From Hemiscyllium ocellatum (lineage: Eukaryota), in assembly GCF_020745735.1 (NCBI RefSeq), contig NC_083406.1, positions 99,487,164 through 99,551,163 of the forward strand: a stretch of DNA of 64,000 nt. The letters are read 5' to 3'. Shown piece after piece: positions 25,159 through 63,302 of the stretch. Positions within the stretch are counted from its first letter, which is position 1; each line of letters starts with the position of its first letter. The notes under the pieces are model-generated. The model saw only the letters and a list, made by a program, of their open reading frames with translations, had not been told where the DNA came from and made no database searches. Both the position numbers and the translations under genes were made by a program.

Positions 25159-25879
25159 GTCCTTTCAGAGGTTGCTTGGCTCATGAAGAACATTGTCAAA
25201 CATTAATAAAGACAGTCATCTGGACTCCTATCCTTTTATCCATGCTGCCTCTTCCCTTTGCTGCTGCACAGCCAGCTAATTTCTGACTGGTAGCAGTGAG
25301 TTTCTGGAGGACTGAGGTAGCAGGACAGAGTCCAACTTTGATGCTGTCAGAAGTAGCTGAGTTGCTCCTGCAGAGAGCTGGAACAGACACAACAGACTGA
25401 ACGGTCTATTCCTGTGCTGTACACATTATTTGATTTTAAAAGCAAAATCAAATTCAGAGGTGGAGGAAAATTCAGAAGTGTCTTGATTGTGGGCATCCTG
25501 TAAGGTTGAGAACTCCAGTGAGCACTTATACCTGATTAACCTGATGCAACATGCACTGTAAAGTGCGAGCACGAGGACATCAGGATTAGACAGGATTGGT
25601 TTGGTTTTTATGGCTGAACACATTATTTGCATAATTGGCCAAGAAATGAATTGGCACTGTTCCCACTCTGCTGGTTTTATTGCACTATAAGCACAGTGAA
25701 AGTCCTGTCTACACATGTAAGTTGGAACATGGACAGCTCTAAACAATTTCCCAGACTTTGTCTGGATGCTTAGTTGGCTAGATCAGATATTGGAGGCCTG
25801 CAGGAGCACATAAACTATTCCCAGTACTTCAAGAGACAAAGAGATAAAATTTGGAAGTATCAGAATGAGTAAGTGGATT

Positions 25880-26035
25880 CGACGTTTCGGGCATGAGCCC
25901 TTCTTCATTCCTGAAGAAGGGCTCATGCCCGAAACATCGATTCTCCTGCTCCTTGAATGCTGCCTGACCTGCTGCACTTTTCCAGCAACACATTTTCAGC
26001 TCTGATCTCCAGCATCTGCAGTCCTCACTTTCTCC
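25880..26035. mobile_element. PLE family A asymmetric palindrome with TSD
   Basis: TSD tgagtaagtggatt (25866-25879) / tgagtaggtggatt (26036-26049); short inverted arm 25876-25907; plus-strand arm carries hammerhead and full tail. Confidence 0.9.
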
Positions 26036-26101
26036 TGAGTAGGTGGATTGCCAGGTTTTGGAAAAAAAACTAGCACTTAAGTAAAATTAAGGGTCAGCCT
26101 T

Positions 26102-27152
26102 GAGGGACACAATGCCACAGTGGTTTTGTCACTGGGTTAGTAACTGGGTTAATGCTCCGAGAACTTGGGCTCAAATCCACGTGATACCAAGAAATGACTG
26201 AAGATGCTGGTTACTGTAACAGCTGTTGGCCCTGTTGACATTCCAACAATAGTAATGATGACTCATGCTCCAGAATTTGCTGTGATCCCAGACAAGCTGT
26301 TCCAGTATAGCTACCACATTTTCATCTGCTCCACAATGTGGAAAATTGCATGTTTTGTATGCAAGAAGCAGGATAAATCCAATCAATTAACACCCTAACA
26401 GTCTACTCTCTAGCATCAGTAAACTGATGGGAAGGATCGTCACACGTGCTACAAGCAGTATTTGCTTAACAATAAGCTGCTCTGTTTGGGTTTTTCCAGG
26501 GTCACTAAACTCATGACCTCATTACAACCTTAGTTCAAACATTGACAAAAGTGCTGAATTCCAATGGTGAGGTCTAGCAAAGCCAGAATCAATGGAAATT
26601 CATTGGGCTCGTACCAGACATAAACAAAAGGGATTGTTGGATCTCAGTCTTCTCAGCTCCAGGACATCAGTGTAGGAGTTCCTCCGGATAGATCCTTGAC
26701 CCAACTATCTTCAGTTGTTTCACCAATGACCTTGTCTCCATCATAAAATTAACCTGTTTTACGGGCCCCACATTTACAGTGAGCCCTTCCATCACCAGAG
26801 CTCAGTAGCCACAGAGCGCACTTTACACAAAATGCACTGCAGAAATTCCCCCAAAGCTCCTTAGTCAGCGCCTTCCAAGCCTACAACCACTACTGTCTAG
26901 AAGGACAAGGGCAGTAGCTACATGGGAACACCATCATCTACAAGCTCTGCTCCAAATCACTCCCCATCCTGACTTGGAAATATATCGCCGTTCCTTCAGT
27001 GTCGCTTGGTCAAAATCCTGGAATAATCTCCCTAACATCATTGGGGGTTTACCTTCACCACATGGACTGCAATAGCTCATGAACACAGCTCACTACCAAC
27101 AAGATGGGTAAACGCTATTGCAGCCAGTTAATTCCTAAACCCATGAATAAAA
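26102..27152 (+). mobile_element. tRNA-SINE head followed by a decayed L2/CR1-group LINE fragment
   Basis: MWKIA..CKKQDKSN...(P)..LLS RT N-terminal remnant; gtaggagttcctc (GVP) region; 3' end cccatgaataaaa. Confidence 0.65.
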
Positions 27153-28933
27153 CCAAAACTGTTATCGAACTTCCAGAAAATGTAACCTAGACTGATAGTT
27201 CATGCCTTTGACAATTATATACAGGATATGGGGGATAATTTTCCCCTCCCTGGTAAGTAGTGAGCATTGGCAAGAACCATTGGGAAGATACAGAGAGAAT
27301 GAAAACTCATAGCTAAATTTTACCAAAACTCAGTTTAGTGTCAATTTGAGGGAGTTTCATGGAGAGTTTCTCTTAGTGAGCTCTTGTAAGTTATCTTGCG
27401 CGATTCTTCACTGTGTCCCATATTTAGTATGCAGCATGCCTTAACGGTGCTTCACTAATGCTATTGTCTTTTCACCAGTGATGGAAGTACTCACTACTCT
27501 GGGGACCGACCAGGATTTTCAGTATCATGTAACGCTGTCTAAAACCCAACCGTATCCAGGCAGTGTTCCTGCTAATTTTGTTTTCCTACTGCATGGACCT
27601 CCAAGATCTGTATGTGGCAGTGACTTCCGGAACCAGATATTGATGCTGCAAATGGTGTGGGCATGCTGATTGCATTCATAAATGTGTAGTTATCTTATAC
27701 TGTTACCTTTCTGATTGCTTGTCATTGTAACTGCAGCAACAAGAATCAAGCTGCAGACCCTCCCTTTCCTGAGTGCCATACCATGTTCAAACCCTGTCTA
27801 AGGCTTTCCCAAAATCCAGTGCAGTCGACCATCTTATCATTGCCCAATGTGGGAACATCACATGTTGGAAAGCCTTCAAAAAGCTGAAAAGTGCTCTCTT
27901 TAATAGACCAACAGTGAAAGCAAAGAAATAAAATAACAAATTTTTAAAAAAGGTACATTTACTTCTGGGGCCAAAGGTACAGTCACTCACTGCAGCCAGC
28001 TCTCTACTATTGGAACCAGAGCTCAATTAAGTCATGTCTGGATTCTTGCACCAATGCTGCATCTCTGTATCATATTGAAGGTAATGTTCCTCCTGCTCTA
28101 TGTCCTCATTTTCCTCCTTGGGAGACTGCCAGCAATCTCTCAACTCTTCAGCATCTACTACATCCCCTCTCCATCTGTTCCAGTTAGACAGGGCACACAT
28201 TCAAAGATTATATTGCACACTTAACTGCTCCCCTTCCACCCTCCTCAGATCAGTCCAAGCACTGGAACCTCATCGCCATTGTGGCTATTATCTGTCACAC
28301 CATGGTCCTGGTGGAAGAATGGACTGCCTTGTATCTGTTCTCAGTCTTAGGTCATGGGGTCATCAGCCATGGCTACAGAGGGTAGTCCTTGTCAGTCAGT
28401 AACGATCCTTCTAAGGCACCTAGCTTTTGAAATGAAGCAGGTACATGAGAGATAGAAAGAACACATGTATCATGACAGCCTCCAGGATACTAGATGGAGA
28501 TTTCTAAGATGTGCCACAAATAATCACAAATGACTTGTTCATTGATTGGTTGAATTTGGAGCCTTGTCATGTTTAGATTGACTGAGCAATAATGACTTGA
28601 AAAGCTTGACACTACCAAATAGGTAGAATATTTTACTTGGCTATGACAAAATGTGTGACAGAGTCAGCTGAGAAGTCCGCCAAAGCTCATCTTAATGTCA
28701 GAAGGAATTTGCACCATCCTTTTCATAAGTGGAAAGGTGGGACTGTCCCCAGGCAGCAGTGAGTTGCCAATTCATGGTGATTCTTGCTTATTGAAGGCCT
28801 TATTAATGGACTGACTCTCCTCTTTAATGTTCAGCTTCTTATCTAACTATACTCACCAAACAAGCTCGATGTGGAGAAAACTCGACATGGAAACCAGAGC
28901 GGGTACCTGGCAATCTGTTTCTATTGCGGAGTA

Positions 28934-29152
28934 CAGTTGGTTCTGCTATAATGCGTGTCTCTTCGATGAGATTTGGCTTTAAAACAATTGAAGAATTTAA
29001 ACTGTTATTTGTAGAACATGAACTTTCCTTATCAGTATTGGCCAAATCACAATTTGGGTCCCATTAATTTAAATGGTGCAGCTATTGCCTGATTTTCTTA
29101 TAGTGCAAGCTCACATGAGAACAGAAGTATCATGTTATATCAGAACCGACTG
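28934..29152. mobile_element. 219-bp MITE, Tigger/pogo-like (Tc1/mariner superfamily)
   Basis: TA | cagttggttctgctataa ... ttatatcagaaccgactg | TA. Confidence 0.85.
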
Positions 29153-29558
29153 TATGTGATGCCTACAATGAGGTATGAGCATGTGGGAGTGCGTGCTTTT
29201 GAAAGCTGTGGTGTTCGGAGGAGACCCATTCAAGCCTGGCAATAGGAAAGCTGTGTTGTCAACTTGAATAGACAAGTTGAGCTTGGAAAGCAGACAAATG
29301 ACAAATTCAACTGATTCTTCTAAAAATAAAAACAAGGTGGAGCGTGGGGGAAGTGAAACATTTCTCTCAGTTCAACTGTAAACTGCTTTGCTACTTGAAT
29401 CTCATACAGTCACAGAGTCATACAGCATAGCATCAAGCCCTTCGGCCCACCACGTCTATGGCAACCAACAAATACCACACTACACTAATTCCGTTTACCT
29501 GGACTTGCTCCATATGCCCTGGCATTTCAAATGCTCATCTAGGTGCTTTTTAAATGTT

Positions 29559-29767
29559 CGAGTAAAAAATGAGGTCTGCAGATGCTGGAGATCACAGCTG
29601 CAAATGTGTTGCTGGTCAAAGCACAGCAGGCCAGGCAGCATCTCAGGAATAGAGAATTCGACGTTTCGAGCATAAGCCCTTCATTCCTGATGAAGGGCTT
29701 ATGCTCGAAACGTCGAATTCTCTATTCCTGAGATGCTGCCTGCTTTGACCAGCAACACATTTGCAGC
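29559..29767. mobile_element. PLE family A palindromic insertion with ~36-nt tail and TSD
   Basis: TSD gctttttaaatgtt at 29545-29558 and 29766-29779; tail 29559-29595; near-perfect arms apart from a small deletion in the right arm. Confidence 0.93.
29683..29718 (+). ncRNA. Minimal type I hammerhead ribozyme (PLE-type)
   Basis: Helix I AUUC/GAAU, core CUGAUGA (29687-29693), helix II GGGC-UUAU-GCUC, GAAA (29707-29710), palindromic ACGU in place of helix III, GUC triplet; predicted cleavage after 29714. Confidence 0.85.
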
Positions 29768-30430
29768 TTTTTAAATGTTGCCTCCACCACCATCTCAGGC
29801 AGCATGTTCCATATTTCTACCACGCTCTGGGTGAAAATGTTTTCTCGCAGATCTTTCTAACTTACCCCTTACCTTAGACTTAGAACTTAATGACCTTTTC
29901 TCAGATTTTCCCATGATCTTTCACGATGAATAAAGTTGTAAATGATAACGTCATTTCATAGTGCTAGATTTTGTTGTGTTGTTCTATTCACCACTTGATG
30001 CTTCCCCGGGTCATGGCTAAAGTTGTGGACGCCCCTGAGGTTTGTACAACTGAAAAACACAGCCAGAGCTAACAGTTTTGTTTCCATATTTTTCACCTAT
30101 CGTCTAGCCAGAATAACCAATAGGTGAGGTTGAGAAATGTTTTTCATCATTTGGATACCTTGCTGACTTACAAAATAAATGTAATAACTCAATGTTATGT
30201 GTTAGCATCACAAAATCATATTCACACTGCTCTTACATTATAAAGCTATTAACCAAAAAAAAATGTAACAGCTGGAAATCTGTTGAGGCTGGATTAGAAG
30301 GCTGTACGTCCTTGTATGATTACCACATTGCAGCTATTCATCTTAACAGGGTGGGGCTGCTTCCACGAGAAAGGCGAAGATAGATGCGTGAGCTGAAAGA
30401 TTTCTTAAAAGTATGAAAGCAGCTGATAGT

Positions 30431-31125: not shown

Positions 31126-31464
31126 TGCAGCTGATGTGTGACACACCATTAAGCGACAGGTTTATGATGTCAACAATGCATCATGACTTGCGACAATTGA
31201 GTAAACCTTGTAAAGTTTTTACAACAAATCGAATTGCTAAGCTTGAGCCCAGGCACATTGCAGTCTGTAATTATAGTGTATGTCTGTAAATATCAGCCAC
31301 ACGTTAACATTCAATGTATTGTCCAGTGCTTCCTAACCAATGTCTTGTCCTTACATTATGGGAGCCCTATGTGAGTCATAGCCAAACAGTCCTGGGCATT
31401 GGCAATTAAGACAAGGGGCTGAAGTGTTCACTTCCACAAATGGGCGTTAAGAGGGGGAATTCTC

Positions 31465-40040: not shown

Positions 40041-41137
40041 TAAAATAGTTTTTGGTTTAGTCCTCTGTACACTCAGCATTATCAAACAAATGTTGTCCAA
40101 TTGAAGAACTGCATTCAATGTATTACGTTTTGCAACTGTGGATTGATTGGTAATGTCAGTACCTTGCTCGTTTCTTCAAGAGTAGATTCAACCCAAGGTT
40201 GTGCCATTTTTTGTTTTAAAATGTGTTGATAATGCTTGAGTGACAAAGTGTCCCACAAATGAATGAGCCTTTATGTAGGATGTAATTGAATAGATTGATA
40301 ATAGTATTATTAATTTACACTGGGCCCTATGTTGTGCTTGGTCTGACGTGTAGAAATTTCTTACTGCTGGCTTTGACAGCCTAGATTTAGGAAAAGGAAA
40401 CTTGCTACTGAGTCCCCTCCTAAACTTTAATTAAAGGAAGTGTGTGTGTCTGACAATGACAATTCGGCTTATTTGGGATACTCTCTGCAATTGACACACG
40501 GTCGGACAATGTATTTCACACATGGCTGTTTATGAAGTGAGGTTGAATGCCTAAAAGTTGGGGAATAGCACCCAATCAGAATTTTCCAAGGGAAAAGAAA
40601 GCTAAAGAAAATAGACATGAGAAATGCTATGCATTTGCATAATGTCAGTAGTAATCTGCTGATACATCTACCAGCGTCCTTGTTTATCTTGTCTTCACTT
40701 GCTAATAGCCATCAGTCATGTTTAACTCTTGAGATCATCAGTAAAGGTAGGTTATATATCCCTAGGGCCCTAAATAGCTGGTTTTTAATGCAATATCAGC
40801 ATAATATAGCTTAAAAACTGGAGGTATTCAGCATCTGTGCACAGACTTCAACACAAATTTGCAATGTTGTACAGTTATACTTGTCCACTGTTGCTGGGAA
40901 TGGAGATAGGAGAGAATTCCAAATAATAACAACGTGTCATTTACTGACAGCTCCCTAATTCTGTCTAGCTGTCAGACAGGTGTTCTGGCAGTAAAGAGAA
41001 GGCAGGCTGCTTATGGATCAGCACTGTTGAGCTTTCCCTCTGATCTGATTTTACCTCCAGCTAATGTGACAATACTCAGGTTATCCCACCATACCATTAG
41101 AAGCTTGGTGTGGACGTCATGGCATTGAAGAATCTGA

Positions 41138-41370
41138 GCTGAAAATGTGTTGCTGGAAAAGCGCAGCAGGTCAGGCAGCATCCAAGGAACAGGAAATTCG
41201 ATGTTTTGGGCACAAGCCCTTCTTCAGGAATTCCTGAAGAAGGGCTTGTGCCCGAAACATGTTGATGTGATGGTCAAATTTCCTGTTCCTTGGATGTTGC
41301 CTGACCTGCTGCGCTTTTCCAGCAACACATTTTCAGCTCTGATCTCCAGCATCTGCAGACCTCACTTTCT
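41138..41370. mobile_element. PLE family A palindromic insertion with tail and 15-bp TSD
   Basis: TSD cattgaagaatctga at 41123-41137 and 41371-41385; centre of symmetry ggaa|ttcc at 41230/41231; tail 41339-41370. Confidence 0.95.
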
Positions 41371-41524
41371 CATTGAAGAATCTGACCAATATTTATTACA
41401 ATGAGGTATTATGTACAACTATTACAATACAATTGAGTAACATGCTTCCAACTGTATCTTTCTTCAAGTGATCTCCAAGTAAGATGGAGAATGAGACCTT
41501 CCTACCCTCGGGTCATATATATTC

Positions 41525-44894: not shown

Positions 44895-45255
44895 CAAAAT
44901 GCTTGCACAGTGGGACCTCAATCATTTATGATTTATATAAATAACTTGGATAAAGGAATCAGTGTACAGTTGTTAACTACACTGATGGTACAAAATAGTT
45001 AGGAAATTAAGTCAAGAGAGAGGGCATAAGTAAGCTAAAAAGAGATATAGATAAGTTAAGAGAGTGGGGAAAATTGTGGCTCATGTAATGTTGGAAAATA
45101 GCAAAAGTGAAGACTGCAGATGCTGGAAACCAGAGTTTAGATCAGTGTGGTGCTGGAAAAGCACAGCAGGTCAGGCAGCATCTGAGGAGTGTGAAATTGT
45201 CCACTTTGTCAGGAAGAATAGGAAAGTGACAGAGGACTTAAATGGAGAGAATGCA
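44895..45255 (+). mobile_element. Decayed CR1 RT fragment with a PLE 3' end inserted at 45100-45189 (minus strand)
   Basis: IYINNLD...TDGTK...NVGK|CEIVHF, split by actgcagatgctgg...gcaggtcaggcagcatc. Confidence 0.75.
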
Positions 45256-45733
45256 AAAAGCTTTGAAGCTTCAAATGTTGACTTAAATGCTGAGATCCAT
45301 TGCCTTTAACTTACAGGCACCCAATAATGCAGAGCCAGTAAATAAATTATTGGTGTGCTGAAAGGGTCTGAAACTTAAAAAGTTTAATTGTATAGGTAAC
45401 TTGGCTAAGTGATTCTCACTTGAATAACATGATATATCCAGAATGTAAGTGAGATTTGATATGACCCACGTGACAAGTTGGGATTGAAAGGAAAATACCA
45501 CATGACATAACAGTAGAGGAAAATGACAAGATTTGGTAAGATTTTCAGTACTTTCCAATGTATTTATTACCAAAATAAAATGTTATTACTCAACTTAAGT
45601 TGGTGAAGTATTGTTTTCTGAGTATCAAGGAGACAATGGGTAAAAAATGAGGTCTGCAGATGCTGGAGATCACAGTTGAAAATGTGTTGCTGGTTAAAGC
45701 ACAGCAGGTTAGGCAGCATCCAAGGAACAGGAA

Positions 45734-45769
45734 ATTCGACGTTTCGGGCATAAGCCCTTCATCAGGAAT
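45734..45769 (-). ncRNA. Minimal type I hammerhead ribozyme (PLE-type), intact
   Basis: Minus strand AUUC-CUGAUGA-A-GGGC-UUAU-GCCC-GAAA-CG-UC-GAAU. Confidence 0.87.
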
Positions 45770-46677
45770 GAGAAGAGTGTGCCAAGCAGGCTAAGATAAA
45801 AGGTAGGGAGGAGGGACTTGGGGGAGGGGTGATGGAGATGTGATAGGTGGAAGGAGGTCAAGGTGAGGGTGATAGGCCGGAGTGGGGTGGGGGCGGAGAG
45901 GTCAGGAAGAAGATTGCAGGTTAGGAGGGCGGTGCTGAGTTGAGGGAACCAACTGAGACAAGGTGGGGGGAGGGGAAATGAAGAAACTGGAGAAATCTGA
46001 GTTCATCCCTTGTGGTTGGAGGGTTCCCAGGCGGAAGATGAGGTGCTCCTCCTCCAGCCGTCGTGTTGTTATGTTCTGCCGGTGGAGGAGTCCAAGGACC
46101 TGCATGTCCTCGGTGGAGTGGGAGGGAGAGTTAAAGTGTTGAGCCACGGGGTGGTTGGGTTGGTTGGTCCGGGCGTCCCTGAGGTGTTCTCCGCTGCACC
46201 CAATGTGGCCTCCTCTACATTGGGGAGACGGGCCGCTTACTTGCGAAACACTTCAGAGAACACCTCAGGGACGCCCGGACCAACTAACCCAACCACCCCG
46301 TGGCTCAACACTTTAACTCTCCCTCCCACTCCACCGAGGACATGCAGGTCCTTGGACTCCTCCACCGGCAGAACATAACAACATGACGGCTGGAAGAGGA
46401 GTGCCTCATCTTCCGCCTGGGAACCCTCCAACCACAAGGGATGAACTCAGATTTCTCCAGTTACCTCATTTCCCCTCCCCCCACCTTGTCTCAGTCGGTT
46501 TCCTCAACTCAGCACCGCCCTCCTAACCTGCAATCTTCTTCCTAACCTCTCCGCCCCCACCCCACTCCGGCCTATCACCCTCACCTTGACCTCCTTCCAC
46601 CTATCACATCTCCATCGCCCCTCCCCCAAGTCCCTCCTCCCTACCTTTTATCTTAGCCTGCTTGGCACACTCTTCTC

Positions 46678-46713
46678 ATTCCTGATGAAGGGCTTATGTC
46701 CGAAATGTCGAAT
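46678..46713 (+). ncRNA. Minimal hammerhead ribozyme, mirror copy with two C>T changes
   Basis: AUUC-CUGAUGA-A-GGGC-UUAU-GUCC-GAAA-UG-UC-GAAU. Confidence 0.7.
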
Positions 46714-47590
46714 TTCCTATTCCTTGGATGCTGCCTAACCTGCTGTGCTTTAACCAGCAACACATTTTCAACTATCAAGGAGACAATATCAAGATACATT
46801 ATTAAAGGCTAATTTTGCAACTTTGTGCTATCTGTGGGAATCTCACTCATCGAGTCATAGAGATGTACAGCAAGGAAACAGAACCTTTGGTGCAACTCGC
46901 CCATGCCAACAAGATATCGCAATCCAATCTAGTCTCACCTGCCAACACCTGGCCCATATCCCTCCAAACCCTTTCTATTCATATACCCATCCAAATGCCT
47001 TTTAAATATTGCAATTGTACTAGCCTCCACCACTTCCTCTGGCAGCTCATTCTATACACTTACCATGCTCTGAATGAAAAAGTTGCCCCTTAGGTCTCTT
47101 TTATATCTCCCCCTCTCATCTTAAATCTATGCCCTCTAGTTCTGGACTCCTCCAACCCAGGGAAGAGACTTTGACTATTTATCCTATTCATGCCTCTCAT
47201 GATTGTATAAATCTCTATGAGGTCACCCCTCAGCCTCCAATACTCCAGGAAAAACAGCCCCAGCCTATTCACCTCTCCCCATAGCTCACATCCTCCAACC
47301 ATGGCAACATCCTTGTAAATCTTTTCTGAACCCTTTCAAGTTTCACAACATCTTTCCAATAGGAAGGAGACCAGAATTGCACACAATATTCCAACAGTGG
47401 CCTAACCGATGTCTTGTACAGCTGTAACATGACCTCCCATCTCCTGTACCCAATTCTCTGGCCAAGAAGGGAAAGCATACCAAATGCCTGCTTCACTAAC
47501 CTATCTACCTGCAACTCCACTTTCAAGAGCTATGAACCTGCACTCCAAGCTCTTTGTTCAGCAACACTCCCTAGGACCTTACCGTTAAGG

Positions 47591-48799
47591 CTGAAAATGT
47601 GTTGCTGGAAAAGCGCAGCAGGTCAGGCAGCATCCAAGGAGCAGGAGAGTCGACGTTTCGGGCATGAGCCCTTCTTCAGGAATGAGGAAAGTGTGTCCAG
47701 CAGGCTAAGATAAAAGGTAGGGAGGAGGGACTTGGGGGAGGGGTGTTGGAAATGCGATAGGTGGAAGGAGGTTAAGGTGAGGGTGATAGGCCAGAGTGGG
47801 GGTGGGGGCGGAGAGGTCAGGAAGAAGATTGCAGGTTAGGGAAGGTGGTGCTGAGTTCGAGGGATTTGACTGAGACAAGGTGAGGGGAGGGGAAATGAGG
47901 AAACTGGAGAAATCCGAGTTCATCCCTTGTGGTTGGAGGGTTCCTAGGCGGAAGATGAGGCGCTCTTCCTCCAGCCGTCGTGTTGCCATGGTCTGATGAT
48001 GGAGGAGTCCAAGGACCTGCATGTCCTTGGTGGAGTGGGAGGGGGAGTTGAAGCGTTGAGCCATGGGGTGGTTGGGTTGGTTGGTCCGGGTGTCCCAGAG
48101 GTGTTCCCTGAAACGTTCCGCAAGTGGGTGGCCTGTCTCCCCAATATAGAGGAGGCCACATCGGGTGCAGCGGATACAGTAAATGATGTGTGTGGAGGTG
48201 CAGGTGAATTTGTGGTGGATATGGAAGGATCCCATGGGACCTTGGAGGGAAGCAAGGGGGGAGGTGTGGGCGCAAGTTTTGTATTTCTTGAGGTTGCAGG
48301 GAAAGGTGCCGGGAGTGGAGGGTGGGTTGGTGGGGGGTGTGGACCTGACGAGGGAGTCACGGAGGGAGTGGTCTTTTCGGAACGCTGATAGGGGAGGGGA
48401 GGGAAATATATCTCTGGTGGTGGGGTCCGCTTGGAGGTGGCGGAAATGACGACGGATGATACGATGTATGTGGAGGTTGGTGGGGTGGTAGGTGAGGGCC
48501 AGTGGGGTTCTGTCCTGGTGTTGATTGGAGGGGTGGGGCTCAAGGGTGGAGGAGCGGAAAGTGGAGGAGATGCGGTGGAGGGCATCATCAATCATGTCTG
48601 GGGGGAAATTGCTGTCTTTGAAGAAGGAGGCCATTTAGGTTGTACGGTATTGGAACTGGTCCTTCTGGGAGCAGATGCGGCGGAGACAAAGGAATTGGGA
48701 GCATGGGATGGCATTTTTACAGGGGGCAGGGTGGGAGGAAGCAGATGCGATGGAGATGAAGGAATTGGGAGTATGGGATGGCGTTTTTACATGGTTTCT
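47591..48799 (-). mobile_element. 5'-truncated Penelope-like element (family A) inserted in CR1
   Basis: TSD ccttaccgttaagg (47577-47590) / ccttaccattaagg (48800-48813); hammerhead core on the minus strand near 47648-47683. Confidence 0.95.
47705..48634 (-). pseudogene. PLE ORF C-terminal part: RT thumb end, Cys-rich linker and GIY-YIG endonuclease (Neptune-like)
   Basis: HIIYCIRCTRCGLLYIGETG..LAERFREH...H...RRLEEERLI..LGTLQPQGMN; linker PCNLKKYKTC...FTCTS; upstream in-frame stop and missing RT core. Confidence 0.92.
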
Positions 48800-50251
48800 C
48801 CTTACCATTAAGGGTAAAAGTTCTGCTTAGATTTGCTTTTCCAAAATGCAACCTTGCATTTATCTGAATTAAACTCCATCTGCCACTCCTCAGCCCATTG
48901 GCCCATCTGATCAGGTTCCCTTGTAATCTGAGGTAACCTTCTTCGCTATCCATTACACCTCCAATTTTGGCGTCATCTGCAAACTTACTAAATGTACCTC
49001 TTATACACACATCCAAATCATTTATATAAATGATGAAAAATAGAGGACCTAGCACAGATCCTTGTGGTACTCCACTGGTCACAGGCCTCCAGTCTGAAAA
49101 ACAACCCTCCAGTACCACCCTCTGTTTTCTACCTTTGAGCCAGTTCTGTATCCAAATGAATAATTCTCCCTGTATTCCATGAAATCTAACCTTGCTAACC
49201 AGTCTCCCATGGGGAACCTTGTCGAATGCCGTACTGAAGTCCATTTGATCACATCTACCGCTCTGCCCTCATCAATCCTCTTTTTTACTTCTTCAAAAAA
49301 CTCAATTGAATTTATGAGACACGATTTCCCACGCACAAAGCCATGTTGACTGTCCCTAATCAGTCCTTGCCTTTCCAAATACATGTACATCCTGTCCCTC
49401 AGGATTCCCTTCAACAACCTACCCACCACCGACATCAGGCTCACCAGTCTATAGATCCCTGGCTTGTCATTATCACCTTTCTTAAATAGTGGCACCACGT
49501 TTGCCAATGACCAGTCTTCTGGCACCTCGCCTGTGTTTATCGATGATACAAATATCTCAGCAACGGGCCCAGCAATTACTTCCCAACTTTCCTAAAGAGT
49601 TCTGGGTACATCTGATCAGATCCTGGGGATTTATCCACTTTTATGTGCTTCAAGACATCCAGCACTTCCTCCTCTGCATTATGCACATTTACAAGGTGTC
49701 ACCATCTATTTTCTTACATTCTGTATCCTTTTCCACAGTAAACACTGATGCAAAATGCTCATTTAGAGTCTCCCGCATCTCCTGCGACTCCATACAACAG
49801 TTGCCTTGCTGATCTTTGAGGGGCCCTATTCTCTCCCTAGTTACCCTTTAGTCCTTAAAGCATTTGTAAAAACCCTTCGGATTCTCCTTAATTCTATTTG
49901 CCAAAGTTATCTCGTCCGTTTTTTGCCCTCCTGATTTCCCTCTTAAATATATTCCTACTGCCTTTATACTCTTCTAAGGGTTTATTTGATCTATCTTGTC
50001 AATACCTGGCCTATGCTTCCTTCTTTTTCTTAACCAAACCCTCAATTTCTTTCATCATCCAGCATCCCCTACACCTACCAGCCTTTCCTTTCACCCTCAT
50101 AGGAATATACTGTCTTTGGACACTCGTTATCTCATTTCTGAAGGCTTCCCATTTTCTAGCCGTCACTTTACCTGTGAATATTTGCCCCAAATCAGCTTTT
50201 GAAAGTTCTTGCCTAATACCGTGAAATTCAATTAAAGTATGCATCTATATC

Positions 50252-50470: not shown

Positions 50471-50519
50471 TATGCACTGCTCACACAATGCTCCTGTTTG
50501 CTGATTATTCAAAACAGTA

Positions 50520-52932: not shown

Positions 52933-53110
52933 GAGTCGAAAAGACTGGTGCTGGAAAAGCACAAAGAAGTCAGGCAGCATCTGAGGAACAGGAGAGTTGA
53001 TGTTTCAGGCATTATTCCTTGTGAAGGGCTAATGCCTGAAATGTCAACTCTCCTGCCCCTTGGGTGCTGCCTAAACTACTGTGCTTTTTCAGTACCACAT
53101 TTTTGATTCT
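52933..53110. mobile_element. Older PLE family A palindrome abutting a CR1 5' truncation
   Basis: gtgctggaaaagcac...ttcaggcatta / taatgcctgaa...gtgctttttcagtac inverted arms. Confidence 0.8.
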
Positions 53111-54412
53111 GAAAGGCAAGGACTGTTTAGGGACAGTCAACATGGCTTTGTGCGTGGGAAATCATGACTCATAAACTCAAATGAGTTTTTTGAAGAAGTA
53201 ACAAAGAGGATGATGAGGGCAGAGCAGTAGATGTGATCTATATGGACTTCAGTAAGCCATTCAAAAAGGTTACCCATGGGAGACTAGTTAGTAAGGTTAG
53301 ATTTCATGGAATAGGGGGAGAACTAGTCATTTGGATACAGAACTGGCTCAAAGGTAGAAGACAGAGGGTTGTTTTTCAGACTGGAGGCCTGTGACCAGTG
53401 GAGTGCCACAAGGATCGGTGCTAGGTCCACAATTTTTCTCCATTTATATAAATGATTTGGATGCAAGCATAAGAGGTATAGTTAGTAAGTTTGCAGATAA
53501 CACCAAAATTGGAGGTGCAGTGGAGAGCGAAGAAGATTTCCTCAGATTACAGTGGGATCTTGATCAGATGGGCCAATGGGCTGAGAAGTGGCAGATGGAG
53601 TTTAGTTTAGATAAATGTGAGGTGCTACATTTTGGGAAAGCAAATCTTCTAAGAACATATATACTTAATGGTAAGGTCCTAAGGAGTGTTGCTGAACAAA
53701 GAGACCTTGGAGGGCAGGTTCATAGCTTCTTGAAAGTGGAGTCACAGGTAGATAAGATAGTGAAGAAGGCATTTGGTATGCTTTCTTTCATTGGTTAGAG
53801 TTTTGAGGACAGGAGTTGTGAGGTCATGTTGTGGCTGTACATGACATTGGTTAGGCCACTGTTGGAAGTTTACGTACAATTCTGGTCTCCTTCCTATCGG
53901 AAAGATGTTGTGAAACTTGAAAGGGTTCAGAAAAGATTTACAAGGCTGTTGCCAGGGTTGGAGGATTTGAGCTATAGGGAGAGTTTAAATAGGCTGGAGC
54001 TGTTTTCCCTGGAGCGTCGGAGGCTGAGGGGTGACCTTATAGAGGTTTACAAAATTATGAGGGGCATGGATAGGATAAATAGACAGAGTCTCTCCCTGGG
54101 GTGGGGGAGCCCAGAACTAGAGGGCATAGGTTTAGGGTCAGAGGGGAAAGATAGAAAACAGACCTGAGTGACAACCTTTTCACACAGAGGGTGGTACGTG
54201 TATGGAATGGATTGCCAGAGGAAGTGGTGGAGGCTGGTACAATTGCAACATTTAAAAGGCATTTGGATGGGTATAAGAATACGAAGGATTTGGAGACATT
54301 GGTCAGGTGCTGGCAGGTGGGAGTAGATTGGGTTGGGATATCTGGTCAGCATGGATGAGTTGGACTAAAGGGTCTATTTCTGTGCTGTGCATCTCTATGA
54401 CTCTATGACTAT
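53111..54412 (+). mobile_element. CR1/HER1-like LINE 5'-truncated copy
   Basis: GVPQGSVLGP, FADNTKI, KCEVLHFG, VQKRFTRLLPGL, RRRLRGDLIEVYK; (ctctatga)n tail. Confidence 0.95.
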
Positions 54413-54419
54413 ATCTGCT

Positions 54420-55238: not shown

Positions 55239-56043
55239 GGGAGCATAAATATCATGACTAGTTGGACTGAATACTTTACTTCTATCCAGCTTATTTTGTG
55301 TGCCATCCATTTATTTGTCCTAACATTCGCACATTCTTTTATTCTTTGGAACAGATGATGGCAGCCACAATGTGAGCAAATGCCATGTTGCTGTCTACTT
55401 TTTAGGTCTGGCAAAGTACTTGTCCTATTGGCAACAGCTTTAACTTGACTGAAGAAAGATGCATGCAGGAACATTCAGTATTCTGAAACCACCATGTGCT
55501 TCAATCTAAATGGATACACATATTGGATGATGGCCGAATGTGCTTCCTTGACAACAACGTTAGAAATCTGTTGCTGTTACTTTACATGTATCTTTGAAAC
55601 TATAACATTACCGTCCAAGCAGATGCCCATTTCATGGTGCTTTGCATTGTTGGTTCTGTGTGTTTGCAGTTGAATGACAAGATTGTTAATTTTTGAAAAC
55701 TTGTTCCCTAAGATGTTTGTAAATGTTTCATAAAATCAATTCCTGGTTCACAAACAATTTGAAAATACATTAAAATAAAGGCAATTTGAGAGTGTGCTAT
55801 TTACCTTTATGGCACTCTTAGCCATTGGGTACCCAACAGAACATGGTGGATTCCAGCAACGCTAGCTTAACTGACAGCAAGAAAGTAGTACCTGTACCAC
55901 ACCATGAAATGGAGCAATTAGCAAGGCAGCAATTTTCAGGAGGTAACCACATTTCATTCTGACTTCCCTCAAGAATTTGCAAACATGTCACATCATGATC
56001 ATCTCAAACTTCCAGACAGTCTTTAGTTGCTAAAACAGAACTT

Positions 56044-56172
56044 CTGAAGATGGGTCACTGGACCTGAAACGTTAACTCTAATTTCTCTGCACACATGCTG
56101 TCAGACCTGCCGAGTTTCTCCAGCAATTTCTGTTTCTGTTTCTGATTTCCAGCATCTGCAGTTCTTTTTGGT
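56044..56172 (+). mobile_element. PLE 3' end (family A-related) starting at a hammerhead core
   Basis: CTGAAGA-t-gggtc-actg-gacct-GAAA-cg-TT...ccagcatctgcag tail; sibling at 18572-18705. Confidence 0.8.
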
Positions 56173-56524
56173 TTGTAAGGTTTTTAAATTGTAGTCTGCA
56201 TTCCTAGCTAATGGGCTGTAAACCTTCAGTGGGAGGTTTTTGGTTGAACTTTCACTTCCATTGTGAGGGTTTGTCTAACAGCTTGGATCATGTGACTGCA
56301 CACTGCATTAAAGGTGGGGTGAGCAGAGGAGATTAGATCACAGCTTCTATGTGGGTGGGCTTCCCGTCATGATGAGTTTGTGGGTTGTGTTAGGAGCCTA
56401 CACATGTTCCAGGCCGAAATCGAATTCTCTGTTAAATCTATCAGCAAATAGAAGACTAAGATTACAAAAAATGTTCCTTTCTGCACTGATTCTGTAAAAT
56501 TGCCATAGTCCCACTGGATAATGG

Positions 56525-58995: not shown

Positions 58996-59560
58996 CCAGT
59001 ATGTGGTACAGAGTAAGGGTTGTTTGAGGTAGTTCCCTCAGTTATTCTTTGTCTTGGGTCTATCTAGTAATTAATGGAAGACGATCTACCATCATAGAGC
59101 TTCTACAGAAGATGCCTTGTTCTTAGACAACAAGAATTGGTTGATGGCAATAAGTACAGCTACATTTGGGCAGGGATAATTACTAAGACTTTAGGGAGCT
59201 GGTACAGATGAACCTGTTCCCTCTGAAATCTAGAATGGAATTCCTTATTTTTTCTCCCATAGAAGAAACATTATATAATCATGTGCAAAGAATATTGCAT
59301 TTTAGGTCCTCCAGTGTGTGGTACTGGGTTTGAAGTAGTTCACTTCAAGAAATCATCTTTTTATTATTTGTTTTATCTTGGGTCTATCTAGTAATTAGTG
59401 CTAAAGGACAAACTACCTACAAAAGAGGCACTCTTCATGGATAACAAGCTGGTAACATGTTCATGACATCAATAAGTACAACTGCATTTGGTCAGGCATA
59501 ATTCCTGGGACCGGAGGGAGCTGATACAAAAACGTCTGCCATCTCTGAAAGCTACAATAT
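58996..59560. repeat. Ancient tandem duplication, period about 315 bp
   Basis: Shared blocks ccagt.tgtggtac, tcttgggtctatctagtaatta, caataagtaca.ct.catttgg, agggagctg.taca, ctctgaaa.cta.aat in the same order in both copies. Confidence 0.85.
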
Positions 59561-60731
59561 TCCATTTACATTAGAATCAGTGGAGTCAATGTGATATGAG
59601 CACAATGTAACCCCTAGAACCAATACCTTATGCCACATAAGTATGAGGTGGTTGATGTGGGCAGAACATTTGCTTAGTTCCCTGTGGCAAAGGATGCAGC
59701 TAGATAAGTCTTTGTACTGATGGGCTACAGATGACAAATAATCGGGTTTGCCTGTTAGTCCGTGGTGATTAGTGCCAGTGAAGTATGGAGCTATGCCTGG
59801 GAATAAGTTGGCACTTTGCTAGAGAGTCGAAGATGACTTTTATAAATTTAAGGGCCATCTTTGAGCATCTGCTTTTAGTACTGGAAGTGCAAATCAGGAA
59901 TTAGAACGCACACTATTGTGCTCTCTCAAGCACAACAGCAGTAAAAAATGATCAGTGTGCTTCAAATTAAGACATGATGTGTTTTAGGAGTGTGTCTGTT
60001 GAACAATGGAAAAGCAAGTACTCAAAAGTCTTTTGGCAAATTTGATGCTTTAACGTATTCAGTTATGAGATGTGAATGTAAGCAGCTGTCTGTGCTATTC
60101 TTTGCTGAGTGTCAGCAGGTTCATCACAGAGAATTCTGATGGTAAGAAGTTGAAGCCCTGATGCAGGTAAAATTGCTGAATGCCACACTAGCTCAGCAGG
60201 GTGTTCAAAGACATTCCCTTCAATGAGGATTTTGTTGCAGGATTACTGAAAAAGAAATGTGGACCCAGCCTGCCGACATGAAAAGCAAGAGAAACAGACC
60301 AGGCCCATTTCAGGTAGAAAGATGCAATGTAAAGGAATCATTTCAGACTTGCCCAACAACGTCAGCCTGCAATTATAATGTTTTGAGAACACTCATTCTA
60401 ATTTTAAACTACTTTACCACAGGGAAAAGATGTTTCCTATGACAGTCATAGCTTTTGTCACTTGGGATTATTCACTTCTTTTTGTGGCAGTTGTGTAAGA
60501 GATTAGGCTCGTCAGCTCTCAATTTTGTATGTTACCACTCTCACTGGAGCTTCACAGTAGTGTCCCCAGCTCATGGAGTCTGGATGGACTGGGGCTAGTA
60601 CCTGTGGAATGAATGGTTGCCAGAAGTATGCAGGATGGATCATGATGTTGCTCAGTGTGTAATGCTGATTGGATACCAGGGTATCATTTTGGATGTCAAT
60701 GCTTCAGCTCACATTACTGTACACAGAGTTT

Positions 60732-61190
60732 GTTTTTTATTCATTTGTGGGACAAGGGCGTTGCTGGCTAGGTCAGCAATTATTGCCCATCGCTAATGGC
60801 CCAGAGGGGAGTTAAGTGTCAGTCACATTCCTGTGGGTCTGGAGTCACGTGTAGGCCTTACCAGGCAAAGATGGCAATTTTTTTTAGATTACTTACAGTG
60901 TGGAAACAGGTCCTTCGGCCCAACAAGTCCACACCGACCCACCAAAGCGCATTTACCCCTTCACCTAACATTATGGGCAATTTAGCTTGGCCAAGTCACC
61001 TAACCTGCACATTTTTGGACTGTGGGAGGAAACCGGAGCACCCGGAGGAAACCCACGCAGACACAGGGAGAATGTGCAAACTCAACACAGTCAGTTGCCT
61101 GAGGTGGGAATTGAACGCAGGTCTCTGGCGCTGTGAGGCAGCATTGCTAACCACTGTGCCACCGTGCTGCCCAATTTCCTTCCCTAAAGA
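60732..61190 (-). mobile_element. Non-HE1 SINE 3' part interrupted by HE1
   Basis: ttttttattcatttgtggg tail; ...aaagatggcaat|ttccttccctaaag split by the HE1 copy. Confidence 0.6.
60884..61172 (-). mobile_element. HE1-type SINE
   Basis: A box, body and attag tail; close to the 52235 subfamily. Confidence 0.92.
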
Positions 61191-61196
61191 GCAAAG

Positions 61197-61372
61197 AATC
61201 ATAGTCATAGAGATGTACAGCATGAAAACAGATCCTTTGGTCCAATTGGTCCATACTGAGCAGATATCCTAAATTAATCTAGTCACACTTGCCAGCATTT
61301 GGCCCATACCCTCCAAACCCTTCCTATTCATATACCCATCCATAGAGTCACAGAGATGTACAGCACAGAAAA
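61197..61372 (-). mobile_element. Two tandem CR1/HER1-like 3' termini
   Basis: gtcatagagatgtacagca near 61204 and gtcacagagatgtacagca near 61347. Confidence 0.75.
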
Positions 61373-61421
61373 CTGTGACAAATTCCTGACTCATGTCTTC
61401 TGGCTGTTATGAAGATACTAC

Positions 61422-61733
61422 AGATTAAATTAGATTAGATTCCCTGCAGTATGGAAACAAGTCCACACCAACCCTCTGAAGAGTAACTCATCCAGACCCA
61501 TTCCCCATATTTACCCCTGACTAATGCACCTAACACTCTGGGCAATTTAACATTACCAATTCATCTGATCTGTCCATCTTTGGATTGTGGGAGGAAACTG
61601 GAGCACCCGGAGGAAACCCACGCAGACAAGGAGAGAATGTACAAACTCCACACAGACAGTCACCTGAGGCAGGAATCAAACCCGGGCCCCTGGTGCTGTG
61701 TGGTAGCAGTTCTAACCACTGAGCCACAGTGCC
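61422..61733 (-). mobile_element. HE1-type SINE
   Basis: Body and tail as in the other copies. Confidence 0.88.
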
Positions 61734-62945
61734 AGCAGATATTTACTGCTTTCCGTTGTTCTTTAAGGGAGCAGTGCACAGATGCTGAGGAACCTTCTGC
61801 TGACTTTCAGGCCTTTGCACAAACCACTCATTCCCAAACTTGAGTGATATTGGTCTTGGGGAATGAGTGAGATAAACTGCTGTGAGAATGAAAAGGGAGA
61901 AGGAAGAGAAAAGCATTCAACAGGAGATCAGGGTATTCAAACAACAATTCTGTCCCTGACCATCCATGAAAAGCAATGACCAGGACATTCCCCTGCTGAG
62001 AAGTAGCATGGCAGATGGTGGGACAGGCAGAAAACCAGGTGGGTTGGTGCCAATGAGATATGTGCCCCCTGCCCGCTGCTCAGAAATTAAGTTCTGGGCA
62101 GATAGGCACATGATCAACCTTCATGACCCGTTGCCCTTAAATAGTTAATTAACAATCTCTTAGAGGCCTCATCCCAACTGGTCTGCAATTACTTTAGCTC
62201 CAGGCTGAATGGGAAAGAGCCAGCCCACCCAACACTATGGGCAGGATGATTTGGATGCTTTGGGTAGTGGGTGAGGGCGTGAGTCTGAGTAAGCATGATA
62301 GACTAATCTGAGGATAGGGTTTGGCCTCTGAGAGCCGCCCCACACTTTCCTAACTTTGAACCCTGACCCCTCTCCCAGCCGCAGCATCTGCAGATGCTGG
62401 CCTCTGATTGGTGGGCAGCTCCAGACAGGCAGGACTTGACTTCTTAATGACTGCAGAAAGTCCGGACTGATGATTGATTCAGTGGGTTTTCTGAATAAGG
62501 TACATAGTGTCTTTCTCTCTGCTTGAATACAGGAAAATCCCGTCCTATGCGTGAGAATTCTGCTCTTCAGTGAGGGTACCCTGACTGAAACGTGCCTATT
62601 GCTGCAGCCATAATGGCAGTGTCAGAGTGGGCCCACGTGGCATTGCCAGTGGCTAATCTGGCAATGACCTTAAACCTACCTAACCTCAATCCACCTGACT
62701 CCTTCCCAGGTTGGAGTTGGAGATGTTTGCAACAATTCACAGTTTTCCGATCACAGTTGCACAAGGGATGTTCAATGAGAGCCACCTGAATTTCATTCCC
62801 CCTCTTGCCTGGGAGAAGCTTTGCTGGGTCGATTGGCTTTCCAAGTCAGAGGGTGACATTTATTGTATGCATGCACTGCATGATCCAATCGCAGAAACAG
62901 ATGGGATTTCATTTGCGCATCAATCCAATGTATGATCATTCACAG

Positions 62946-63152
62946 AGGAGAAAGTGAGGTCTGCAGATGCTGGAGATCAGAGCTGAAAATGTGTTGCTGG
63001 AAAAGCGCAGCAGGTCAGGCAGCATCCAAGGAGCAGGAGATTCGACGTTTCGGGCATAAGCCCTTCATCAGGGCTTTTGCCCGAAACGTCACATCTCCTG
63101 CTCCTTGGATGCTGCCTGACCTGCTGCGCTTTTCCAGCAACACATTTTCAGC
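62946..63152. mobile_element. PLE family A palindromic insertion with 35-nt tail and 15-bp TSD
   Basis: TSD tatgatcattcacag at 62931-62945 and 63153-63167; tail 62946-62980. Confidence 0.96.
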
Positions 63153-63302
63153 TATGATCATTCACAGCCAATCATGCAGTTCATGCCTGATACACTGGCA
63201 GCAGTAATGGTCCTTTGACGTCATTGATTGAATATGCTTACTGTATTTGAATCACCATGGCAAAACAAAACATGACTACTGGATAACGTGAGCTGTCTGA
63301 GA

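What the first reader, a model, noticed from the sequence alone, without database searches (positions are those of the whole stretch)
25866..63167. Stereotyped palindromic PLE insertions: full 3' end on one side, fixed internal end ~35 nt short on the other, 13-15 bp TSD
Seen: five insertions (25880, 29559, 41138, 45638, 62946) each consist of two 5'-truncated copies fused at their 5' ends with both 3' ends facing outward, bounded by clear 13-15 bp TSDs. In four of them one arm keeps a 32-37 nt terminal tail and the other stops at the same base (...cattttcagc/caac), with 1-3 nt shared with the target. Single-arm copies at 23647 and 47591 stop at that same point. In most copies the two arms share insertion-specific variants. 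Established: PLEs use a GIY-YIG nuclease for target-primed reverse transcription, and inverted pseudo-LTRs with a short tail are known for Drosophila Penelope. Inference: both staggered target nicks are primed, one at the RNA 3' end and one at a defined internal site. The two cDNAs overlap in sequence, unlike L1 twin priming, and are joined in the middle. That implies two templates or re-use of one.
Basis: partly seen in the sequence, partly recalled or inferred. Interest (0 to 1): 0.85.

Follow-up and report, generated by a model that had tools for sequence, protein, structure and literature searches.

The report
Head-to-head Penelope retrotransposon insertions in shark
These are real single-event, head-to-head double insertions of a very abundant shark Penelope-like retrotransposon, with a 33-38-nt tail on one arm only; that layout is already a published hallmark of the class, but the copies here show that each arm was reverse-transcribed separately.

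Summary
Five insertions are inverted pairs of 5'-truncated copies of one Penelope-like element (PLE), with 3' ends outward and 13-15-bp target-site duplications (TSDs). In four, one arm carries a 33-38-nt tail and the other stops at the same base (position 0). Two single-arm copies also stop there.

The element encodes a C-terminal GIY-YIG endonuclease and a minimal hammerhead ribozyme (HHR). Closest proteins come from carpet sharks.

The layout is not new. An inverted 5'-truncated copy with a 30-40-bp tail "often at one end only" is a published PLE hallmark. Frangieh et al. 2024 showed in vitro that a PLE protein cuts and extends both strands from two internal start sites one tail-length apart.

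What this window adds:
- In two insertions each arm holds sequence the other lacks, which rules out simple snap-back.
- The arms of one insertion share private variants.
- Centres join with 2-4 nt of microhomology.
- Short arms end at the 5' edge of the HHR (-93 to -95), a boundary also seen genome-wide in contigs.
- The target next to the tail-less end resembles the start of the tail.

A genome-wide peak at the tail-less end could not be shown. Other first readers of this scan noted the same architecture elsewhere in this genome.

The parts
25866..25879 (.). Left TSD of insertion 1. The right copy is at 26036-26049.
   Evidence: 14 bp with one mismatch.
25880..25907 (-). Insertion 1, atypical short arm, element -88..-61. 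It has no 3' module. Its 3' end lies 1 nt past the predicted HHR cleavage site.
25905..26036 (+). Insertion 1, tailed arm, element -95..+36. The tail is 26001-26036.
   Evidence: The tail-flank junction also appears in a contig of organism label C (record 16).
29559..29684 (-). Insertion 2, tailed arm, element -84..+38. The tail is 29559-29596.
29685..29767 (+). Insertion 2, tail-less arm, element -94..0, with a 10-nt internal deletion. TSD copies are at 29545-29558 and 29766-29779.
   Evidence: The arms are 100% complementary over 53 + 28 nt.
41138..41230 (-). Insertion 3, tail-less arm, element -93..0.
41231..41371 (+). Insertion 3, tailed arm, element -93..+34. It carries a 14-nt insertion 1 nt from the predicted HHR cleavage site. 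TSD copies are at 41123-41137 and 41371-41385.
45638..46191 (-). Insertion 4, tailed arm, element -516..+37. The tail is 45638-45674.
46190..46772 (+). Insertion 4, tail-less arm, element -584..0. Bases 46192-46255 are absent from the other arm. TSD copies are at 45623-45637 and 46773-46787.
   Evidence: The centre junction shares 2 nt.
62946..63069 (-). Insertion 5, tailed arm, element -90..+36. The tail is 62946-62981.
63070..63152 (+). Insertion 5, tail-less arm, element -82..0. TSD copies are at 62931-62945 and 63153-63167.
47590..48790 (-). Single-arm, 5'-truncated PLE copy of about 1.2 kb that ends at position 0. It has a 14-bp TSD (one mismatch) and sits inside a LINE.
   Evidence: Paralogous LINE copies run uninterrupted at 53111-54055 and 23151-23720.
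47705..48634 (-). PLE ORF remnant (309 aa) with the GIY-YIG endonuclease. Its stop codon lies about 20 nt upstream of the HHR module.
   Evidence: GIY-YIG, E 5.8e-4, below the Pfam cut-off; shark homologues down to E 2.8e-105; homologues carry RVT_1 followed by GIY-YIG.
23556..23647 (+). Single arm, element -91..0, tail-less. It is inserted in a LINE copy without a TSD.
45104..45189 (-). Single arm of a sister subfamily, element -51..+31 and beyond, tailed.
63301..63676 (-). Tailed arm of a sixth palindrome from a diverged subfamily, reaching to about -331.
63677..64000 (+). Opposite arm of the sixth palindrome, starting at about -487. Its first ~160 nt are absent from the tailed arm. It runs off the window, so its 3' end type is unknown.
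52946..53108 (.). Old palindrome of the same superfamily. The arms are 82% complementary and the ends are too decayed to score.

Best explanation
Each palindrome is one integration event of a canonical endonuclease-bearing Penelope-like element.

Shown or directly implied by the sequence:
- The element's nuclease makes a double-strand cut staggered by 13-15 bp.
- Both exposed 3'-OH ends prime reverse transcription.
- One cDNA starts at the distal start site (tail end, +33..+38). The other starts at the proximal site (position 0).
- Both cDNAs copy the same RNA or sister RNAs from one source locus.

Inferred:
- Most cDNAs run to a common 5' boundary at -93..-95. This is the 5' edge of the minimal hammerhead, about 20 nt past the ORF stop codon. 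[quoted passage not shown] Others stop earlier.
- The 3' ends of the two cDNAs anneal through 2-4 nt of complementarity, and each is extended on the other. A natural TTCAT/ATGAA inverted repeat at -96..-82 favours this.
- The result is a head-to-head repeat with one tail.
- Priming at position 0 seems helped by pairing between the nicked target and the first ~7 nt of the tail.
For: Identity as a PLE:
- GIY-YIG ORF remnant.
- Shark homologues with RT followed by GIY-YIG.
- A min-HHR motif with an extra nucleotide after A9, a G10.1-C11.1 pair and a palindromic ACGU at helix III. These are the features listed in PMC4209133.

One event per palindrome:
- A single exact 14-15-bp TSD brackets each pair.

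Two separate cDNAs:
- In 45638 each arm holds sequence the other lacks: 64 nt against a 37-nt tail.
- The same holds in 29559.

Same template source:
- Arms are mutual nearest neighbours at 0-5% divergence, against 8-25% to other copies.

Centre joining:
- Centre overlaps measure 3, 4, 2, 3 and 2 nt.

Genome-wide contig evidence:
- Tail ends are sharp at +34..+38, with about 2,400-3,300 contigs per run carrying unrelated AT-rich flanks.
- A 5' boundary at -94/-95 shows 608 contigs with unrelated flanks and a threefold depth drop.
- Tandem joints run from -94 to the tail end.

Target-tail similarity:
- The target next to tail-less ends matches the tail start at 23 of 42 positions, P about 5e-5.
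- Flanks at tailed ends match at 14 of 49.

Literature:
- The anole PLE protein cuts and extends both strands. It starts at two internal sites spaced by the tail, and is predicted to be a dimer (PMC11167929).
Against: - Only four fully scorable palindromes show the tailed/tail-less pairing. Under independent choice at p = 0.5 this has probability 0.06.
- The contig survey did not list a peak at position 0. Any such peak is below about 190-400 contigs per position, against thousands at the tail end. Tail-less ends may be rare genome-wide, or blurred by homology with the flank.
- Insertion 25880 breaks the rule: its second arm ends at -61.
- In vitro, no strand difference in start-site choice was seen, and priming was reported as homology-independent.
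- The -94/-95 boundary could be a strong stop for the enzyme rather than an RNA end. No RNA data could be laid on it.
- The window length in the target-tail similarity test was chosen after seeing the data.
Confidence: 0.65

Rival explanations
1. Snap-back self-priming. A single cDNA folds back on itself at the inverted junction and copies itself, so the second arm is a copy of the first. This is the idea raised for rotifer Penelope elements.
For: - The inverted junctions are palindromic, with 2-4 nt overlaps.
- A natural TTCAT/ATGAA hairpin sits exactly where the short palindromes turn.
- In 62946, 25880 and 41138 the shorter arm could formally be a copy of the other.
- Self-priming was proposed in PMC3846280.
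Against: - In 45638 and 29559 the arm that carries the loop lacks the tail, and the arm with the tail lacks the loop. Neither can be copied from the other.
- Simple snap-back predicts symmetric ends, both tailed or both tail-less. Four of four scorable palindromes are asymmetric.
Confidence: 0.08
2. Fold-back mini-element. The ~200-bp palindrome is itself a non-autonomous mobile unit, like a MITE or SINE, copied as a whole from palindromic master copies.
For: - Turn-round points recur near -82..-95.
- Copy number is very high, with 60,000-160,000 contigs laid per run.
- Several first-stage notes elsewhere in this genome describe a fixed arm + arm + tail layout. These notes are unchecked.
Against: - The centres differ in detail in every copy.
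- Arm lengths range from about 28 to 584 nt.
- Each palindrome belongs to a different subfamily that it shares with long or single-arm copies. For example, 62946L is 2.4% from the 1.2-kb copy.
- Both outer ends coincide with the two start sites used by single-arm copies.
- No parental flank is carried along.
- The -94/-95 boundary also occurs in contigs that continue into unrelated sequence, so it is not specific to palindromes.
Confidence: 0.07
3. Endonuclease resolution. The one-sided tail does not come from start-site choice. The element's nuclease cuts a multimeric or inverted intermediate at its own recognition site at the 0/+1 junction.
For: - Craig et al. 2021 suggest that the tail results from nuclease-mediated resolution.
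- The Drosophila nuclease needs the tail sequence for recognition, as summarised in PMC11167929.
- Target DNA next to tail-less ends resembles the start of the tail. That would also fit a nuclease preference for this motif.
- Tandem tail duplications and unit tandems exist in contigs.
Against: - In vitro mapping places the reverse-transcription start sites on both borders of the tail, with no need for resolution.
- Exact TSDs directly abut both kinds of end.
- Single-arm copies with either end type exist.
Confidence: 0.12
4. Two independent insertions of separate copies landed by chance at the same site in opposite orientation.
For: PLEs tend to insert into or near their own copies. Two copies entered the same LINE family about 15 bp apart, at 23556 and 47590.
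Against: - One TSD brackets the whole pair, and none lies between the arms.
- The arms abut with microhomology and no intervening target DNA.
- The arms share private variants.
- The pattern recurs six to seven times in 64 kb.
Confidence: 0.02

Closest known systems
[quoted passage not shown] 2013, PMC3846280; Craig et al. 2021, PMC8557442)
   Same: - RT followed by a C-terminal GIY-YIG domain.
- A hammerhead motif in the terminal repeat module.
- Frequent 5' truncation.
- An inverted 5'-truncated copy placed head-to-head.
- A 30-40-bp tail often at one end only.
- TSDs of variable length.
- Tandem units.
   Different: - There is no qualitative difference.
- Here the dominant products are tiny (~200 bp) pairs of the 3' module alone. 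They turn at the 5' edge of the hammerhead, and copy number is very high.
- The tailed/tail-less pairing is seen in every scorable case, not just 'often'.
Anole Poseidon (PAc) in vitro reaction (Frangieh et al. 2024, PMC11167929)
   Same: - Two start sites about one tail-length apart, near an AC-rich segment.
- Both target strands are cut and extended.
- AT-rich targets.
- A hammerhead close to the start sites.
   Different: - In vitro, no strand preference for either site was seen, and no homology with the target.
- Here the two sites are used once each per event.
- Here the target at the tail-less end resembles the start of the tail.
- In PAc the ORF starts inside the hammerhead. Here the ATG in loop II (present in only some copies) runs into a stop at +2..+4, and the hammerhead lies just after the ORF stop.
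L1 twin priming (Ostertag & Kazazian 2001; from my own knowledge)
   Same: - The second nicked strand also primes on the RNA.
- The result is an inverted structure.
- Microhomology at the inversion junction.
- A single TSD.
   Different: - In L1 the two cDNAs cover different, non-overlapping parts of one RNA, and the second primer anneals at a variable internal place.
- Here the arms overlap almost completely.
- Here both arms start at fixed sites about 36 nt apart.
Metazoan retrozymes and min-HHR repeats (Cervera & de la Pena 2014, PMC4209133; 2020, PMC7229834)
   Same: - The same minimal type I hammerhead with a palindromic helix III, thought to act as a dimer.
- Short non-coding units derived from PLE terminal modules.
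- Tandem units are seen in contigs.
   Different: - Retrozymes are described as tandem direct repeats that give circular RNAs.
- The units here are mostly dispersed, flanked by TSDs and head-to-head.
- Circular RNA was not tested.
Foldback elements and MITEs (DNA transposons)
   Same: Short palindromic inserts flanked by TSDs.
   Different: - The ends are asymmetric, with a tail on one side.
- Arm length and centre vary.
- TSD length varies (13-15 bp).
- The arms are 3' modules of a retroelement.
- No terminal inverted repeat is shared with a DNA transposase element.

Membership tests
EN+ Penelope-like elements | A single ORF with RT followed by a C-terminal GIY-YIG endonuclease | tested here: met
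   - The window ORF 47705-48634(-) hits GIY-YIG at E 5.8e-4, which is below the Pfam cut-off.
- Its shark homologues (E down to 2.8e-105) carry RVT_1 upstream of GIY-YIG. One of them scores above the cut-off.
- The window copy is 5'-truncated and lacks its own RT.
EN+ Penelope-like elements | A hammerhead ribozyme motif in the terminal repeat (pLTR) module | tested here: inconclusive
   - The sequence motif CTGA(A/T)GA-A-GGGC-N4-GCCC-GAAAC-GTC is present in more than 12 copies.
- It is conserved across three families, with changed but still pairing helix II.
- It fits the min-HHR features of PMC4209133.
- Rfam models give no hit.
- Self-cleavage was not tested.
EN+ Penelope-like elements | [quoted passage not shown] | tested here: met
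   - Tails of 33-38 nt sit on one arm in four of four scorable palindromes.
- A sharp genome-wide end lies at +34..+38.
EN+ Penelope-like elements | An inverted 5'-truncated copy and/or partial tandem forming pseudo-LTRs | tested here: met
   - Six to seven head-to-head pairs occur in 64 kb.
- Tandem joints run from -94 to the tail end in contigs.
- No full-length pLTR-ORF-pLTR copy is in the window.
L1-type twin priming | The two inverted segments are non-overlapping parts of one RNA, and the second primer anneals at a variable internal site | tested here: not met
   The arms overlap by 80-516 nt, and both begin at fixed sites.
Foldback or MITE DNA transposon | Symmetric terminal inverted repeats with fixed ends, and amplification as a unit with shared internal sequence | tested here: not met
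   - The ends are asymmetric.
- The centres are unique to each copy.
- Arms range from 28 to 584 nt.
Metazoan retrozymes | Tandem direct repeats with a hammerhead that produce circular RNA | not tested
   - Tandem joints were seen only as a minority of contigs.

The most novel reading that the evidence does not exclude
The two start sites are not chosen independently. One ribonucleoprotein, perhaps the predicted protein dimer, holds a single RNA whose ~36-nt tail bridges the two ends of the staggered break.

One DNA end pairs with the first ~7 nt of the tail and primes at position 0. The other DNA end primes at the tail's far end. Each site is therefore used exactly once per event, and the same RNA is read twice.

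The two cDNAs are then joined by microhomology, most often at the RNA 5' end beside the hammerhead. Scars within 1 nt of the predicted cleavage site suggest that hammerhead-cleaved RNAs are sometimes used as templates in vivo.
Probability: 0.3. Interest if true: 0.6.

Novelty: new member of a known kind. Interest (0 to 1): 0.35.

Why it matters
How Penelope-like elements integrate is still largely unknown, and only one in vitro study exists.

This shark family offers a very large natural set of young, tiny, complete integration products. Both ends, the centre junction and the target can be read in about 200 bp.

A census of these products could test three things:
- whether the two start sites are coupled within one event;
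- whether both arms come from one RNA;
- whether target-tail pairing guides priming.

The window itself does not reveal a new kind of element. For annotation, these inserts should be called PLE solo-module pairs, not MITEs or microRNA hairpins. Rfam gave weak microRNA-like hits on them.

Tried and rejected
- **Rfam.** Searches at gathering and permissive thresholds found no hammerhead. They gave only weak microRNA-like hits on the palindromes. The hammerhead assignment therefore rests on motif comparison with PMC4209133.
- **Metagenome scan.** A scan for a conserved 19-mer returned 48 loci, all chance matches of 19-26 nt.
- **The look-up of encoding contigs.** Look-ups for two shark homologues returned no DNA because the files are too large.
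- **Read laying, tail-less end.** Both calls show the tail end and the -94/-95 boundary. Neither lists a peak at position 0. I cannot say whether that end is rare or blurred.
- **Read laying, palindrome centres.** Opposite-strand joints at palindrome centres are nearly absent from the short contigs. This is expected, because inverted arms collapse in such assemblies, so I did not use it as evidence.
- **Depth ratios.** Tail-to-body depth ratios of about 0.8 were not used as copy-number estimates, following the tool's own warning.
- **RNAalifold.** It predicts a long-range helix between GAUGCUG at about -43 and CAGCAUC in the tail. That helix would enclose position 0. The energy is only -8.8 kcal/mol and there is almost no covariation, so I treat this as a lead only.
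- **Palindrome 52946.** It might be tail-less on both arms, but it is too decayed to score.
- **RT ORFs.** I first took the RT ORFs at 48717-49525 as part of the PLE. One search showed that they belong to the LINE that was the target.
- **Pyatkov et al. 2004.** The paper could not be read.

Full report
**What is there**

The window is vertebrate DNA. The closest proteins to its PLE ORF come from the sharks Chiloscyllium, Rhincodon and Stegostoma.

A self-comparison finds about eleven copies of one repeat family between 12 kb and 64 kb. I number the element from position 0, the last base of the motif ending CACATTTTCAGC. The tail is +1 to about +36.

The family is a canonical endonuclease-bearing Penelope-like element (PLE):
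- The ORF at 47705-48634(-) carries a weak GIY-YIG match.
- Its homologues have RT followed by GIY-YIG.
- Starting about 20 nt after the ORF stop lies a minimal hammerhead motif: CTGA(A/T)GA, one extra A, a GGGC/GCCC helix II, GAAAC, then GTC.
- This motif has the extra nucleotide after A9, the G10.1-C11.1 pair and the palindromic 15.2-16.2 positions that Cervera and de la Pena list for PLE min-HHRs (PMC4209133).
- Rfam models do not detect it, and cleavage activity is untested.

**Checking the observation**

All five insertions are as described. The exact repeats flanking them are 14 bp (one mismatch), 14, 15, 15 and 15 bp.

| Insertion | Left arm | Right arm |
|---|---|---|
| 25880 | -88..-61 | -95..+36 |
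| 29559 | -84..+38 | -94..0 |
| 41138 | -93..0 | -93..+34 |
| 45638 | -516..+37 | -584..0 |
| 62946 | -90..+36 | -82..0 |

- Four of the five pair a tailed end with an end at exactly position 0.
- The single arms at 23556-23647 and 47590-48790 also end at 0.
- A sixth palindrome starts at 63301 and runs off the window. A seventh, at 52946, is too old to score.
- Arms of one insertion are each other's closest relatives in 29559, 41138 and 45638.
- In 45638 the arms match at 502 of 516 positions, while each is only about 90% like the 47590 copy.
- In 29559 the arms have no substitutions over 81 nt, although the copy is about 15% from the others.

Three corrections:
- The 47590 copy is only about 1.2 kb. 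It sits inside a LINE with its own 14-bp TSD, so the RT ORFs at 48717-49525 are the LINE's.
- The 23556 arm has no TSD.
- The odd arm of 25880 ends at -61.

**What the anatomy implies**

One TSD brackets each pair, so each pair is one event.

With a staggered cut that yields a TSD, each 3'-OH end carries one copy of the target. A cDNA primed on each end gives exactly the observed layout: TSD, antisense arm, sense arm, TSD, with 3' ends outward.

The key point is that in 45638 the tail-less arm has 64-68 nt at the centre that the tailed arm lacks. The tailed arm in turn has 37 nt that the tail-less arm lacks. The same holds in 29559 on a scale of a few nucleotides. In 63301 the arm opposite the tail has about 160 extra nt, though its 3' end is unseen.

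Neither arm can be a copy of the other. Two separate reverse-transcription events are needed, and simple snap-back is excluded for these cases. Because the arms share private variants, both templates came from one RNA or from one source locus.

The centre junctions overlap by 3, 4, 2 and 3 nt in the short palindromes and by 2 nt in 45638. This fits annealing of the two cDNA 3' ends, or a template switch.

**Why the short palindromes turn at the hammerhead**

In three of the four short palindromes at least one arm reaches -93 to -95.

Laying contigs of a public DNA run on 45600-46189 shows 297 + 311 contigs that match up to -94/-95 and then continue into unrelated sequence. Depth drops threefold at that point. 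Contigs also join -94 directly to the tail end of a next unit.

This boundary is therefore a genome-wide property of the template. It is most simply the RNA 5' end or a strong stop, not a property of palindromes.

The sequence there holds a small inverted repeat, TTCAT...ATGAA. This gives two cDNA ends something to pair through. That last step is inference.

**Genome-wide ends**

The family is extremely abundant under three organism labels, with 63,000-114,000 contigs laid per run.

Ends at +34 to +38 are sharp, with roughly 2,400-3,300 contigs per run continuing into unrelated AT-rich sequence.

A matching peak at position 0 is not among the listed rows. It must be below about 190-400 contigs per position.

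The first 7 nt of target after tail-less ends match the first 7 nt of the tail at 23 of 42 positions, against about a quarter expected. The probability is about 5e-5 by sampling random sites in the window. Flanks at tailed ends match at 14 of 49.

Two readings fit. Either the nicked target pairs with the start of the tail and so sets priming at 0, or the nuclease prefers a motif that the element itself carries at 0/+1. The test window was chosen after seeing the data, and n = 6.

**Comparison with what is known**

The architecture is not new:
- Craig et al. [quoted passage not shown]
- Arkhipova et al. 2013 describe the same in rotifers, and proposed self-priming for the palindromic junctions.
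- Frangieh et al. 2024 showed that the anole PLE protein cuts and extends both strands. It starts at two internal sites whose spacing equals the tail, and is predicted to be a dimer.

A full-text search found no paper that links Penelope with twin priming. The explicit statement that each arm is a separate cDNA, with one start site used per arm, may therefore be unpublished, but it is a short step from the 2024 data.

**Verdict**

This is a real, well-described example of a known PLE hallmark in a shark family.

It adds modest mechanistic detail: two independent cDNAs, the same template source, microhomology joining, run-off at the hammerhead edge, and target-tail similarity.

The coupling of the two start sites is suggestive (four of four), but it is not established genome-wide.

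Other first-stage readers noted the same layout in other parts of this genome. I treat those notes as unchecked leads.

Noticed in passing
window 25880 and 41259-41275: Two irregularities lie within 1 nt of the predicted hammerhead cleavage site (C-62 / G-61).
- The atypical arm of insertion 25880 ends at -61.
- One arm of insertion 41138 has a 14-nt insertion between -63 and -62.

Both may be footprints of hammerhead-cleaved RNAs used as templates. The count is two, and the link was made after seeing the data.
   Followed up: partly
window 23151-23720, 47200-49600, 53111-54055: Three copies of one LINE family are present, with RT ORFs at 48717-49525. Two of them were hit independently by the PLE about 15 bp apart, at 23556 and 47590. 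This hints at a preferred target sequence.
   Followed up: partly
window 17666-17857 and 10723-10830: A second, unrelated-looking fold-back family is present. Its arms are 67 nt and 87% complementary. It has a one-sided extension of about 50 nt. The 17666 copy has a 12-bp TSD (TTATCCACAAAG). This is the same arm + arm + one-sided-extension layout.
   Followed up: no
window 2780-2900(-), 18557-18700, 25016-25155, 56034-56176: Older single-arm 3' modules of other PLE families are present. They have the same order of hammerhead, conserved GCTGCC.GACCTGC box and CCAGCATCTGCAG tail motif. Their helix II has a different sequence (GGTC/GACC) that still pairs.
   Followed up: partly
window 25939-26036 and equivalents: GAUGCUG at about -43 can pair with CAGCAUC at +10..+16 of the tail. 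The pairing would enclose position 0 and an inner UGCUG/CAGCA hairpin. It is conserved across families but shows almost no covariation.
   Followed up: partly
contigs laid on window 25908-26100 and 45600-46189: Tandem duplications of the tail alone are seen, with the tail end joined back to +2..+7. Tandem units run from -94 to the tail end. Occasional tail-to-tail inverted joints also occur.
   Followed up: no
window 26015-26100: The tail-flank junction of insertion 25880 is also present in a contig from organism label C, with 4 differences in 85 nt. This insertion appears older than the split of those labels. That agrees with its TSD mismatch.
   Followed up: no
window 29624-29631 versus 29741: The tail-less arm of 29559 lacks 10 nt that the otherwise identical tailed arm has. 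The arms show no substitutions over 81 nt, so this may be a reverse-transcription slip rather than later decay.
   Followed up: no
window 46164-46283, 63036-63097, 52990-53055, 41203-41260, 25886-25933: With permissive thresholds, Rfam reports weak microRNA-precursor-like hits on the palindrome centres. These are artefacts of the inverted PLE arms and could mislead automatic annotation.
   Followed up: yes
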